This document shows, one piece after another, positions 11,901-12,679 of a stretch of 42,330 nt of DNA. The stretch is taken from contig NC_069005.1 of NCBI RefSeq assembly GCF_001194135.2, positions 20,313,406 through 20,355,735 on the forward strand, read 5' to 3'. The notes under the pieces are model-generated. The model had not been told where the DNA came from and did no database searches. It saw only the letters and a list, made by a program, of their open reading frames with translations. How positions within the stretch are numbered: the first letter of the stretch is position 1; each line of letters begins with the position of its first letter. The stretch is from Octopus bimaculoides (taxonomy: Eukaryota). The translations under genes were made by a program, and so were the position numbers.

Positions 11901-12679
11901 ATGCAAATCTACTGGAATATCTTAGTCTTTTTTGCTACAAGCACTGTTTCTGTGCTTGGCGATATTAAGCAAGATGTGGTCTACAAGTTCAGTTCTCTCA
12001 CCTTCGAATCATTACAGGGAGTTTACAGTTCGTCAGAAAATGTTGTTAAGGACATTCAAGTCTACAATGATACAGTCTACGTAAGCATACCACGGCTCAC
12101 TCCAAATGTTCCAGTAACGTTGGCTACTGTCGAGAAGAAAAACGATAAAGTTGTGTTTAAACCTTTCCCAACCTTGAAAGATCAAAAATTAGGTGACTGC
12201 AATGCTTTGCAATCGGTCGGCGGAATACGTGTTGTTCGTAAAACGAATCTACTCTACGTAGCAGATAATAAATACTTAGGGTGTAGTGCCAAACTAATTA
12301 TTTTCGATTTAGTCAAACGATCAATAAAAACGAGATATGAGTTTCCCAATTCGGTTATCGGTGAAATAAAAAATTCCACACAATTTGAGGACATTGTCGT
12401 CGATGGTAAAGGTAATGTGTACATAGCAAATGCTGGAACACCTGGTTCAATCATAGTCTACATGAGTAAAATGAAAAAAAGCTTCGTTTTCCATGATCGA
12501 ATATTGGAGGTCGTCAATCCTGTCACTTTCAAATTTGGCAACGATTCGTACATTATGAATCAAAGTATAAGTGAAATGACGCTTTCACCCGAAGATGATT
12601 ACCTGTTCTTCGTTACTCATTATAAGAAGACTGTCCAAGTCCCGACAAAATCTTTTGAGGATATTTCAACCCGGATGAG
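11901..12679 (+). CDS. yellow-like: Yellow/MRJP-family protein, coding exon 1 (signal peptide and N-terminal part of the six-bladed beta-propeller)
   Basis: Signal peptide MQIYWNILVFFATSTVSVLG|D. Family motifs YVSIPRL..VPVTLA, PFP, GDCNALQSV, LYVAD..GCSAKLIIFDL..YEFP, DIVVD..VYIAN..GSIIVY, MTLSP..LFF. The ORF stop overlaps a strong donor AG|GTAGGT at 12679/12680. Confidence 0.92.

What the first reader, a model, noticed from the sequence alone, without database searches (positions are those of the whole stretch)
11901..12679. Candidate for the cephalopod dopachrome-converting activity (ink melanin) or an amine-binding protein
Established: insect Yellow-f-type proteins convert dopachrome to DHI, sandfly salivary Yellows bind biogenic amines, and a decarboxylative dopachrome-rearranging activity has been described biochemically from cuttlefish ink. 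Inference: a secreted cephalopod Yellow is a natural molecular candidate for that activity, or for amine scavenging in salivary or skin tissue. The sequence alone cannot tell these apart.
Basis: inference. Interest (0 to 1): 0.7.

Follow-up and report, generated by a model that had tools for sequence, protein, structure and literature searches.

The report
Octopus yellow gene, first exon

Summary
The ORF at 11901-12679(+) is real. It is exon 1 of a two-exon gene. Exon 2 lies 24.9 kb downstream at 37572-38016, and the spliced product is 407 aa. It matches Pfam MRJP/Yellow (55.8 bits against a cutoff of 19.8). A high-confidence model (pLDDT 92) matches only Yellow-family structures.

The gene is already published as the Octopus bimaculoides DCE/yellow of Rosani et al. 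2019 (PMC6678240). Their His-333/Tyr-352 numbering fits my protein exactly. They already proposed it as a dopachrome-converting candidate and reported high expression in skin, suckers and viscera.

What I add:
- The O. vulgaris ortholog has identical exon boundaries, and dN/dS is 0.30.
- Cuttlefish (Sepia esculenta) has an expressed ortholog with the same intron.
- An uncharged C-terminal hydrophobic tail preceded by small residues suggests a GPI anchor rather than free secretion.
- Five of seven LJM11 amine-contact positions are lost, including Asp to an invariant Lys.
- The ortholog is absent from the 361-protein O. vulgaris ink proteome, which does contain a tyrosinase-domain "DCT" protein.

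Candidate status is legitimate but not new. The ink and amine roles are disfavoured but not refuted, because the ink sac was never sampled for RNA.

The parts
11901..12679 (+). Exon 1 (CDS, 779 nt, aa 1-259 plus 2 nt of codon 260). It holds the start codon, the signal-like sequence and roughly blades 1-4 of the propeller.
   Evidence: ORF. Donor ATGAG|GTAGGT. Pfam MRJP 31 bits. Identical exon boundary in O. vulgaris.
11901..11960 (+). Predicted signal peptide (aa 1-20, MQIYWNILVFFATSTVSVLG|D)
   Evidence: Hydrophobic N-terminal stretch (Kyte-Doolittle 2.19 over 10 aa) with V and G at -3/-1. This is a heuristic, since no dedicated predictor was available. Rosani et al. report signal peptides as typical of DCE/yellow proteins.
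12680..37571 (+). Single phase-2 intron, 24,892 bp, filled with transposon debris and six assembly gaps
   Evidence: GT..AG boundaries. The homologous phase-2 intron is 18,559 bp in O. vulgaris and is present in the decapodiform loci L003 and L005. RVT_1 and DDE_3 fragments. N runs.
37572..38016 (+). Exon 2 (CDS, 445 nt: last base of codon 260, aa 261-407, stop TAG at 38014-38016). It holds the last blades and the C-terminal tail.
   Evidence: Acceptor ...TTCTCATTATAG|C. Pfam MRJP positions 196-284. tblastn. Identical boundary in O. vulgaris.
37786..37830 (+). Last-blade pocket motif LHPGKMSFDNHGNLW (aa 332-346). PGKM is invariant in the five cephalopod sequences, where the rest of the family mostly has W-P-D-(T/S).
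   Evidence: Alignment A3. Column counts over 100 sequences. Register against LJM11 and Aedes DCE.
37942..38013 (+). Candidate GPI-attachment signal (aa 384-407): small residues S-T-A-A, spacer LDRK, then a 16-residue uncharged hydrophobic tail that ends the protein
   Evidence: T382, S384 and A387 are invariant, and the tail is uncharged in octopods and decapodiforms. 69 of 129 full-length relatives have a similar tail.

Best explanation
Shown: 11901-12679 is exon 1 of the single two-exon Yellow/MRJP gene of an octopus, almost certainly O. bimaculoides. This is the gene published as 'DCE/yellow' by Rosani et al. 2019. It encodes a 407-aa six-bladed beta-propeller, is under purifying selection, and has orthologs in octopods and cuttlefish. 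Inferred: the protein enters the secretory pathway. Its C-terminal tail is then exchanged for a GPI anchor, so the roughly 41-kDa glycosylated propeller sits on the outer face of epithelial cells of skin and suckers, or on the lumenal face of a secretory compartment. As in other Yellow proteins, the working part would be the central pore, which holds a small planar aromatic compound. The most likely single chemistry is handling of catechol- or indole-derived quinones. That would include dopachrome/dopaminechrome to DHI conversion, serving integumentary melanisation or tanning (wounds, sucker lining) and not ink. The pocket is remodelled compared with insect Yellows, so a changed substrate or a purely binding role is nearly as likely. 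My estimates: gene identity and structure 0.97, membrane anchoring 0.7, integument rather than ink as the main site 0.7, true dopachrome-converting activity about 0.3.
For: Gene model: phase-compatible GT/AG splice giving 407 aa; one continuous MRJP hit at 55.8 bits; O. vulgaris annotated ortholog of 407 aa with identical exon boundaries that translates exactly. Identity with the published gene: His-333/Tyr-352 numbering matches, and the paper says the genome annotation was incomplete, which fits the 260-aa exon-1-only database entry P0002. Fold: model pLDDT 92, pTM 0.89; the top ten PDB matches are all Yellow family (Aedes DCE TM 0.70-0.72, MRJP1, LJM11, Ava_4197), followed by a gap to TM about 0.42. 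Constraint: dN/dS 0.30 at dS 0.23, and intact ORFs in five cephalopod sequences. Cephalopod clade in 100/100 bootstraps, with a shared phase-2 intron. Anchor: N-terminal hydrophobic stretch plus an uncharged C-terminal tail preceded by invariant small residues. Site of action: above 100 TPM in skin, suckers and viscera; not found in the ink proteome.
Against: No activity, ligand or localisation has been measured for any cephalopod Yellow. The GPI inference rests on a heuristic, not a dedicated predictor, and a tail-anchored or cleaved form is possible. Skin expression does not by itself imply melanin chemistry, because cephalopod chromatophore pigment is ommochrome. Positions shared by insect Yellow-y, Aedes DCE and LJM11 (Tyr at 107, Asp at 336) are Gly/Arg and Lys in cephalopods, which weakens transfer of DCE chemistry by homology. 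The ink sac was not among the O. bimaculoides RNA-seq tissues, so an ink-gland role is not excluded. A membrane-bound or melanin-bound protein could also be missed by ink proteomics.
Confidence: 0.5

Rival explanations
1. One reading: this Yellow is the decarboxylating dopachrome-rearranging enzyme of cephalopod ink. It would be made in the ink gland and act in melanosomes to turn L-dopachrome into DHI.
For: It belongs to the only animal family with proven dopachrome-to-DHI enzymes. The Sepia ink activity also yields DHI. A Sepia esculenta ortholog exists and is transcribed. The Sepia enzyme is described as melanosome-associated, which a membrane anchor would suit. The ink sac was never sampled in the O. 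bimaculoides expression data.
Against: The ortholog's gene symbol, accessions and peptides are absent from the O. vulgaris ink proteome files as held. The complete 361-protein table lists a tyrosinase-domain protein mapped to DCT (41 PSMs) and peroxidases instead. High expression is in non-ink tissues. The review notes that the substrate preferences of the Sepia enzyme differ from those of insect DCEs. From my memory of Palumbo et al. 1994, which I could not retrieve: the enzyme ran at about 85 kDa, co-migrated with tyrosinase and was inhibited by tropolone and mimosine. That fits a copper tyrosinase-family protein better than a 41-kDa metal-free propeller. The pocket is also diverged from Aedes DCE.
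Confidence: 0.08
2. One reading: an amine-scavenging protein like sandfly LJM11, binding serotonin, dopamine or octopamine in saliva or skin secretions.
For: Same fold as LJM11 (TM 0.68-0.72). An aromatic residue is kept at the position of LJM11 Phe-325 (H/Y/F) and, in octopods only, at Phe-344 (Tyr-352).
Against: Five of seven LJM11 contact positions are lost: Y90 to G107, Q91 to G108, F178 to A178, F223 to S224, and D328 to K336, which is invariant in cephalopods. This agrees with the published table. A Lys in the pore should repel a protonated amine (my inference). The posterior salivary gland was sampled but is not among the tissues above 100 TPM. A membrane-anchored protein is a poor diffusible scavenger.
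Confidence: 0.04
3. A neofunctionalised, non-catalytic surface protein. The cephalopod lineage kept the Yellow propeller but rebuilt its pore for a different ligand, or for protein or matrix binding, at the skin and sucker surface. MRJPs show a comparable loss of any melanin role.
For: Long branch for the cephalopod clade. Loss of highly conserved family residues: D335 (77/95 others) to G, W333 (84/95) to H/Y/F, Q107 (64/95) to G/R, and D112 (89/95) to V in octopods. Among solved structures the profile scores best against MRJP1 (6e-23, versus 2e-10 for DCE). Skin pigment is ommochrome, not melanin. There is a large charge shift between lineages (mature pI 9.3 in octopus, 5.6 in Sepia).
Against: Several near-invariant family residues are kept (R65, D122, D164, Y174, D340). 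Purifying selection is compatible with an enzyme. No alternative ligand is known. Aedes DCE itself lacks W333 and D335 (it has Y-P-N-D), so those two changes do not argue against catalysis.
Confidence: 0.3
4. Not a working gene: a pseudogene, or an ORF that is an annotation artefact of a draft assembly.
For: The assembly is gapped, with 10 N runs. The public database carries only a truncated 260-aa product for this locus. The intron is full of transposon fragments.
Against: Both exons are intact with canonical splice sites. The structure is identical in O. vulgaris, and dN/dS is 0.30. Spliced transcripts of the Sepia ortholog appear in more than 100 sample blocks. Expression of the O. bimaculoides gene is published. 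The ORF length is far beyond chance.
Confidence: 0.01

Closest known systems
Octopus bimaculoides DCE/yellow (Rosani et al. 2019, Genes 10:495, PMC6678240)
   Same: Same gene: 407 aa, His-333 and Tyr-352 at the published positions, a single MRJP domain. The genome annotation was incomplete and was corrected from RNA-seq. It was proposed as a dopachrome-converting candidate, and low pocket conservation was already noted.
   Different: Nothing of substance. The paper does not mention the C-terminal hydrophobic tail or a GPI signal, the conserved intron, the Asp-to-Lys change, a Sepia ortholog by name, or the ink-proteome absence.
Aedes aegypti dopachrome conversion enzyme / Drosophila Yellow-f, f2 (PDB 9w1k)
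   Same: Same family and fold (TM 0.70-0.72, rmsd 3.9 A). An aromatic residue at position 333 and Asp at 340 are shared.
   Different: Only 17-18% identity. Single-sequence E-value is 0.03 and profile E-value 2e-10. DCE has Tyr/Arg at 107/108 and Asp at 336 where cephalopods have Gly or Arg, Gly/Ala/Ser, and Lys. In the NJ tree the cephalopod clade groups with the presumed lophotrochozoan sequences, apart from the hymenopteran yellow clade; that tree includes no Yellow-f or Aedes DCE sequence. Activity is untested.
Sandfly salivary Yellow-related protein LJM11 (PDB 3q6k)
   Same: Same fold (TM 0.68-0.72). Aromatic residues at the positions of Phe-325 and, in octopods, Phe-344.
   Different: Five of seven ligand-contact residues are lost, including the Asp-328 to Lys charge reversal. 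Not salivary. Probably membrane-anchored.
Honeybee MRJP1 (PDB 5yyl, 7asd)
   Same: Best-scoring solved relative by sequence (profile E 6e-23), with the same fold.
   Different: MRJP1 is a soluble nutritional and oligomerising protein of a recent hymenopteran expansion. There is no evidence that the octopus protein oligomerises or is secreted in bulk.
Dopachrome-rearranging enzyme of Sepia officinalis ink (Palumbo et al. 1994)
   Same: Both concern cephalopods and the DHI-forming reaction typical of the Yellow family. A Sepia ortholog of this gene exists.
   Different: That enzyme has never been identified at the molecular level. Its reported properties point elsewhere: different substrate preference from insect enzymes and, from my memory only, about 85 kDa, co-migration with tyrosinase and inhibition by tropolone. 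The octopus ortholog was not found in ink.

Membership tests
Yellow / MRJP family (Pfam PF03022) | Sequence match to the family HMM above the curated threshold | tested here: met
   Spliced protein scores 55.8 bits against a cutoff of 19.8, positions 31-283 of 288. Exon 1 alone scores 31 bits and exon 2 alone 20.1 bits.
Yellow / MRJP family (Pfam PF03022) | Six-bladed beta-propeller fold matching solved family members | tested here: met
   Model pLDDT 92, pTM 0.89. The top ten Foldseek PDB hits are all Yellow family, TM 0.62-0.74, and the next hits are at about 0.42.
Yellow / MRJP family (Pfam PF03022) | N-terminal signal peptide (extracellular protein) | tested here: inconclusive
   Hydrophobic N-terminus with a plausible VLG|D cleavage site. 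No signal-peptide predictor was available.
Dopachrome-converting Yellows (Yellow-f/f2, Aedes DCE) | Orthology or closest relationship to the Yellow-f/DCE clade | tested here: not met
   The profile scores MRJP1 at 6e-23 and DCE at 2e-10. In the NJ tree the cephalopod clade sits with the presumed lophotrochozoan sequences, apart from the hymenopteran yellow clade, but no Yellow-f or Aedes DCE sequence was in that tree. The published tree leaves the cephalopod position unresolved and 'ancestral'.
Dopachrome-converting Yellows (Yellow-f/f2, Aedes DCE) | Conservation of the DCE pocket or catalytic residues | tested here: inconclusive
   No paper defining the catalytic residues of 9w1k was found. 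By alignment, DCE Tyr107/Arg108/Asp336 are Gly/Gly/Lys in octopus, while aromatic 333 and Asp340 are kept.
Dopachrome-converting Yellows (Yellow-f/f2, Aedes DCE) | Measured dopachrome-to-DHI activity | not testable with these tools
   This needs recombinant protein and an enzyme assay.
Amine-binding salivary Yellow-related proteins (LJM11 type) | Ligand-contact residues Tyr-90, Gln-91, Phe-178, Phe-223, Phe-325, Asp-328, Phe-344 | tested here: not met
   These map to G107, G108, A178, S224, H333, K336 and Y352, so only the last two aromatic positions are similar. This agrees with Table 2 of PMC6678240.
Amine-binding salivary Yellow-related proteins (LJM11 type) | Abundant expression in salivary gland | tested here: not met
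   From the literature only: values above 100 TPM were reported for skin, suckers and visceral mass. The posterior salivary gland is part of that dataset.
Sepia ink dopachrome-rearranging enzyme | Gene present and expressed in cuttlefish | tested here: met
   P0218 (419 aa, 34% identical end to end) is carried as an uninterrupted CDS on RNA-seq contigs of runs cited for Sepia esculenta whole larvae.
Sepia ink dopachrome-rearranging enzyme | Protein present in ink or ink gland | tested here: not met
   Octopus only: absent from the complete 361-protein table and from all held supplement text of the O. vulgaris ink proteome. Two of the supplement files were truncated when stored. Sepia ink was not tested.
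Sepia ink dopachrome-rearranging enzyme | Physical properties of the purified enzyme (size, inhibitor profile) | not tested
   The original paper is not held. My recollection (about 85 kDa, tyrosinase-like inhibitors) does not fit a predicted mature polypeptide of 41.4 kDa, but a recollection is not a test.
GPI-anchored surface proteins | N-terminal signal plus a C-terminal signal: small omega-region residues, a short spacer, and an uncharged hydrophobic tail with no cytoplasmic extension | tested here: inconclusive
   The pattern is present and conserved: T382, S384 and A387 are invariant, and the 16-residue tail has no charged residue in 5 of 5 cephalopod sequences. No GPI predictor or experiment was available.

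The most novel reading that the evidence does not exclude
The cephalopod Yellow clade is a neofunctionalised, GPI-anchored surface propeller. Its pore was rebuilt (W333 to H/Y/F, D335 to G, Lys-336 invariant; octopods also lost the near-invariant D112) for a ligand that no other Yellow handles, acting at the skin and sucker epithelium. Alternatively, against the present evidence, its decapodiform ortholog is the ink dopachrome-rearranging enzyme that has lacked a molecular identity since 1994.
Probability: 0.12. Interest if true: 0.6.

Novelty: already known. Interest (0 to 1): 0.22.

Why it matters
It matters little as a discovery. The gene, its family, its candidate dopachrome-converting role, its tissue expression and its poorly conserved pocket were all published in 2019. 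The remaining value is practical.

- The locus gives the correct two-exon model where the public protein entry is truncated to exon 1.
- A cuttlefish ortholog is now in hand. This makes the 30-year-old question of which protein performs decarboxylative dopachrome rearrangement in Sepia ink directly testable, against a rival tyrosinase-family candidate that is actually found in octopus ink.
- The probable GPI anchor and the Asp-to-Lys change in the pore mean function should not be transferred from insect Yellows without an assay.

Tried and rejected
- **Sepia enzyme paper.** Palumbo et al. 1994 could not be retrieved by PMC id or DOI. A text search for its properties found nothing. Those properties are therefore cited only as my memory.
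- **DCE structure paper.** No paper was found for the Aedes DCE structure 9w1k, so catalytic residues could not be defined.
- **Transcript look-up.** Transcript-level proof of the junction for this species rests on the published RNA-seq reconstruction and on the O. vulgaris annotation.
- **Second word-indexed search.** The profile search was swamped by hymenopteran yellows and added no molluscs. The exhaustive HMMER search was needed.
- **Tree script.** The first version timed out and was redone with numpy distances.
- **First model.** It used 4 sequences and was mediocre (pLDDT 64). It was replaced by the 100-sequence model.
- **Ink-proteome supplements.** Files S1 and S7 were truncated when stored, so absence rests mainly on the complete table S2.
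- **Rejected: additional or alternative exons.** tblastn shows only two matching segments.
- **Rejected: pseudogene.** dN/dS is 0.30 and five orthologs are intact.
- **Rejected: skin expression implies melanogenesis.** Chromatophore pigment is ommochrome.
- **Rejected: the viscera signal reflects the ink sac.** That sample is heart, kidney and hepatopancreas.
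Full report
**What is at the coordinates.**
An ATG-initiated ORF runs from 11901 to 12683 on the + strand (260 aa). This is the longest gap-free ORF in the window. In 200 first-order Markov simulations of the same sequence, the longest ORF averaged 121 aa and never exceeded 206 aa. The product passes the curated Pfam threshold for MRJP/Yellow (31 bits against 19.8), but covers only profile positions 31-149 of 288. So it is part of a gene.

**The whole gene.**
- Exon 1 is 779 nt and ends in phase 2.
- At 37570-37571 a polypyrimidine tract and AG precede an ORF that matches MRJP profile positions 196-284.
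- Joining 11901-12679 to 37572-38016 gives 1224 nt and a 407-aa protein. That protein yields one continuous MRJP match at 55.8 bits.
- tblastn with the spliced protein, the Sepia ortholog and a Haliotis relative finds only these two segments in the window.
- The model has independent confirmation. The best database hit is a 407-aa O. vulgaris protein, 86% identical over 100% of the length.
- In the O. vulgaris chromosome assembly that gene spans 19.8 kb. Taking 779 + 445 nt at its ends gives a CDS that translates exactly to the annotated protein, with a G|GTAGGTGGAA donor and a TTGCAG|C acceptor.
- The intron is 24,892 bp here and 18,559 bp in O. vulgaris.

**Already published.**
Rosani et al. 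2019 (PMC6678240) traced DCT and DCE/yellow genes across metazoans. For O. bimaculoides they report the following.
- They modelled the protein on LJM11 and MRJP1 and found low conservation of pocket residues.
- They found expression above 100 TPM in skin, suckers and visceral mass, while DCT was almost restricted to retina.
- Their Table 2 gives His-333 and Tyr-352 for the octopus protein. My spliced protein has H at 333 and Y at 352.

The truncated 260-aa database entry that is identical to the window ORF (P0002) is presumably that incomplete annotation. The window is therefore almost certainly O. bimaculoides. That is an inference, since names of window-encoded proteins are hidden.

**Family and fold.**
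- An exhaustive HMMER search with the octopod profile found 481 relatives.
- After the octopods, the best named hits are Lingula (three domains), a unionid bivalve, Arion, Haliotis and a sponge.
- A first 4-sequence AlphaFold model was mediocre (pLDDT 64). A 100-sequence alignment gave pLDDT 92 and pTM 0.89.
- With the better model, the top ten PDB matches are all Yellow-family structures: MRJP1, Aedes aegypti DCE (TM 0.70-0.72, rmsd 3.9 A), LJM11 and Ava_4197. The next matches are generic WD40 propellers at TM about 0.42.
- The fold does not separate enzyme, amine binder and storage protein. By sequence the cephalopod profile is closest to MRJP1 (6e-23), then DCE (2e-10) and LJM11 (3e-8).

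**Cuttlefish have the gene.**
- The nearest non-octopod relatives are unnamed assembly-derived proteins P0218 (419 aa) and P0220 (420 aa). They are 34-36% identical to the window protein from end to end.
- P0218 occurs as an uninterrupted CDS on 2-6 kb contigs in more than 100 sample blocks.
- Two of those runs, SRR20545817 and SRR19578105, are listed in the data statement of a Sepia esculenta whole-larva RNA-seq paper.
- Genomic contigs of this clade show a phase-2 intron at the homologous position: CTGGG|GTAAG in L003 and TTGCAG|G AAT CCA in L005.
- In a neighbour-joining tree of 56 family members, octopods plus these sequences form a clade in 100 of 100 bootstraps. The clade sits on a long branch among the presumed lophotrochozoan sequences and apart from the hymenopteran yellow clade.
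- One requirement of the ink hypothesis, an ortholog in Sepia, is therefore met.

**Selection.**
Between the two octopus species the CDS is 90.4% identical, with dN 0.071, dS 0.234 and dN/dS 0.30. This is a functional gene that evolves fairly fast.

**Not simply secreted.**
- Besides the hydrophobic N-terminus (plausible cleavage VLG|D), the protein ends in LLISLIIATVMLCIVL. This is 16 uncharged residues running to the stop codon, preceded by the small residues S-T-A-A and a short spacer.
- T382, S384 and A387 are invariant, and the tail is uncharged in all five cephalopod sequences.
- This is the classical layout of a GPI-attachment signal. The same kind of tail occurs in 69 of 129 full-length relatives collected here, including ant yellow-like proteins.
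- Rosani et al. do not mention an anchor.
- No GPI predictor was available, so this remains an inference.
- The mature polypeptide (residues 21-384) is 41.4 kDa with five N-glycosylation sequons.

**The pocket.**
I mapped the LJM11 ligand-contact residues listed in the paper through HMMER alignments and motif register.

| LJM11 residue | Octopus position |
|---|---|
| Tyr-90 | Gly-107 |
| Gln-91 | Gly-108 |
| Phe-178 | Ala-178 |
| Phe-223 | Ser-224 |
| Phe-325 | His-333 |
| Asp-328 | Lys-336 |
| Phe-344 | Tyr-352 |

Aedes DCE has Tyr, Arg and Asp at positions 107, 108 and 336. Column counts across the 100-sequence alignment show the divergence.

| Position | 95 non-cephalopod members | Five cephalopod sequences |
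|---|---|---|
| 333 | Trp in 84 | H/H/Y/F/F |
| 335 | Asp in 77 | Gly in all five |
| 336 | Thr/Ser in 80 | Lys in all five |
| 107 | Gln in 64 | G/G/G/R/R |
| 224 | Asp/Asn in 80 | S/S/H/N/K |
| 112 | Asp in 89 | Val in octopods, Asp in decapodiforms |

R65, D122, D164, Y174 and D340 are kept. The pore is therefore remodelled. An LJM11-type amine site is not present, and a Lys in place of the Asp should disfavour a cationic amine (my inference). Transfer of DCE chemistry by homology is weak. It is not excluded, because DCE itself lacks Trp-333 and Asp-335.

**Ink.**
- The O. vulgaris ink proteome (PMC10142993) identified 361 proteins.
- The ortholog's identifiers (LOC115224275, A0A6P7TPR5, A0AA36FIU5, XP_029650946) do not occur in any held supplement, including the complete summary table S2. 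Six of its tryptic peptides do not occur either.
- The table does list a tyrosinase-domain protein of O. bimaculoides mapped to DCT (41 PSMs, 30% coverage) and peroxidases.
- The O. bimaculoides 'viscera' RNA sample is heart, kidney and hepatopancreas. The posterior salivary gland was sampled and the ink sac was not.
- So the ink-gland transcript level is unknown. The protein was not detected in octopus ink, and a tyrosinase-family rival is there.
- The review literature says the Sepia enzyme is melanosome-associated, complexed with other melanogenic enzymes, and differs from insect enzymes in substrate preference.
- I recall from the 1994 paper an apparent mass near 85 kDa, co-migration with tyrosinase, and inhibition by tropolone and mimosine. 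That would favour a copper protein. I could not retrieve the paper, so this is unverified memory.

**Skin.**
High expression in skin and suckers was read by Rosani et al. as pointing to melanogenesis. Cephalopod chromatophore pigment is ommochrome (xanthommatin), not melanin. Skin expression alone therefore does not imply melanin chemistry. A role in wound or immune melanisation, in tanning of the sucker lining, or in something unrelated is equally open.

**Verdict.**
It is a genuine and legitimate candidate, but both specific roles are disfavoured by what evidence exists.
- The finding is already known.
- My best account is a probably GPI-anchored Yellow propeller of the integument with a remodelled aromatic-ligand pocket. 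I put dopachrome-type conversion at about 0.3, a changed ligand or non-catalytic role at about 0.3, the ink enzyme at about 0.08 and amine scavenging at about 0.04.
- Decisive tests are ink-gland expression in squid, cuttlefish and octopus, Sepia ink proteomics, and a recombinant dopachrome assay run side by side with the tyrosinase-family protein found in ink.

Noticed in passing
window 12680-37571 and flanks: 17457-18338(-), 5842-6141(+), 35169-35396(-): The intron and flanks are full of decayed transposon ORFs. There are reverse-transcriptase (RVT_1) fragments at 17457-17852(-) (45 bits) and 5842-6141(+) (33 bits), a weaker piece at 17901-18338(-), and a DDE_3 transposase fragment at 35169-35396(-). 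ORFs at 26809-27156(-), 25033-25353(-), 40281-40649(-) and 28632-28952(+) look integrase-, LINE- or mariner-like by eye, but gave no Pfam hit at E<=0.01 or only a weak one.
   Followed up: partly
window 3239-3881, 8250-8259, 9036-9045, 10254-10772, 13530-13810, 17123-17222, 22162-22273, 26290-26685, 27291-27489, 39175-39520: There are ten runs of N (10-643 bp), six of them inside the intron, so this is a draft scaffold. The true intron length and content are approximate.
   Followed up: no
window 11901-12683 (database entry P0002): The public protein collection still carries a 260-aa product identical to exon 1 read through into the intron (one extra Arg, then a stop). This is the truncated gene model that Rosani et al. 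said they had to correct.
   Followed up: partly
PMC10142993 supplementary table S2; O. bimaculoides gene OCBIM_22022789mg (not in this window): A tyrosinase-copper-domain protein mapped to human DCT is abundant in O. vulgaris ink (41 PSMs, 30% coverage). Rosani et al. found octopus DCT expressed almost only in retina, in a dataset that lacked the ink sac. It is a concrete rival candidate for dopachrome conversion in ink.
   Followed up: partly
window protein position 112 (nt 12234-12236), alignment A4: Octopods (O. bimaculoides, O. vulgaris, Argonauta) have Val where 89 of 95 other family members, and the two decapodiform sequences, have Asp (the 'EIDP' motif). This is an octopod-specific loss of a near-invariant residue.
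   Followed up: no
proteins WIN and P0218: There is a large charge difference between orthologs. The predicted mature octopus protein has pI 9.3 and the Sepia esculenta one pI 5.6.
   Followed up: no
L001 (P0070, run SRR29346471): This is an intronless 419-aa relative (30% identical) with the same kind of C-terminal hydrophobic tail. It is the sister of the cephalopod clade in the NJ tree. The species is unknown.
   Followed up: no
L002 (P0004, run SRR11869385): This is a genomic contig from a third Octopus-like species (80% identical in exon 1). The ORF stops just after the homologous ...SSRM residues, as the window's exon-1 read-through ORF does after ...STRM. The called ORF also runs 106 aa upstream of the real start codon.
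   Followed up: no
window 3985-4240, 18100-18400, 20600-20870, 42157-42330 and others: Microsatellites are abundant: (AAT)n giving poly-Asn/Ile ORFs near 4000-4200, (AC/GT)n giving CVCVCV/THTHTH ORFs, and (TA-rich)n giving YIYIYI ORFs at the window's 3' end.
   Followed up: no
window 38605-38610: The only AATAAA/ATTAAA hexamer within about 1 kb downstream of the stop codon is an ATTAAA 590 nt after it. It is a possible polyadenylation signal, with no transcript evidence checked.
   Followed up: no
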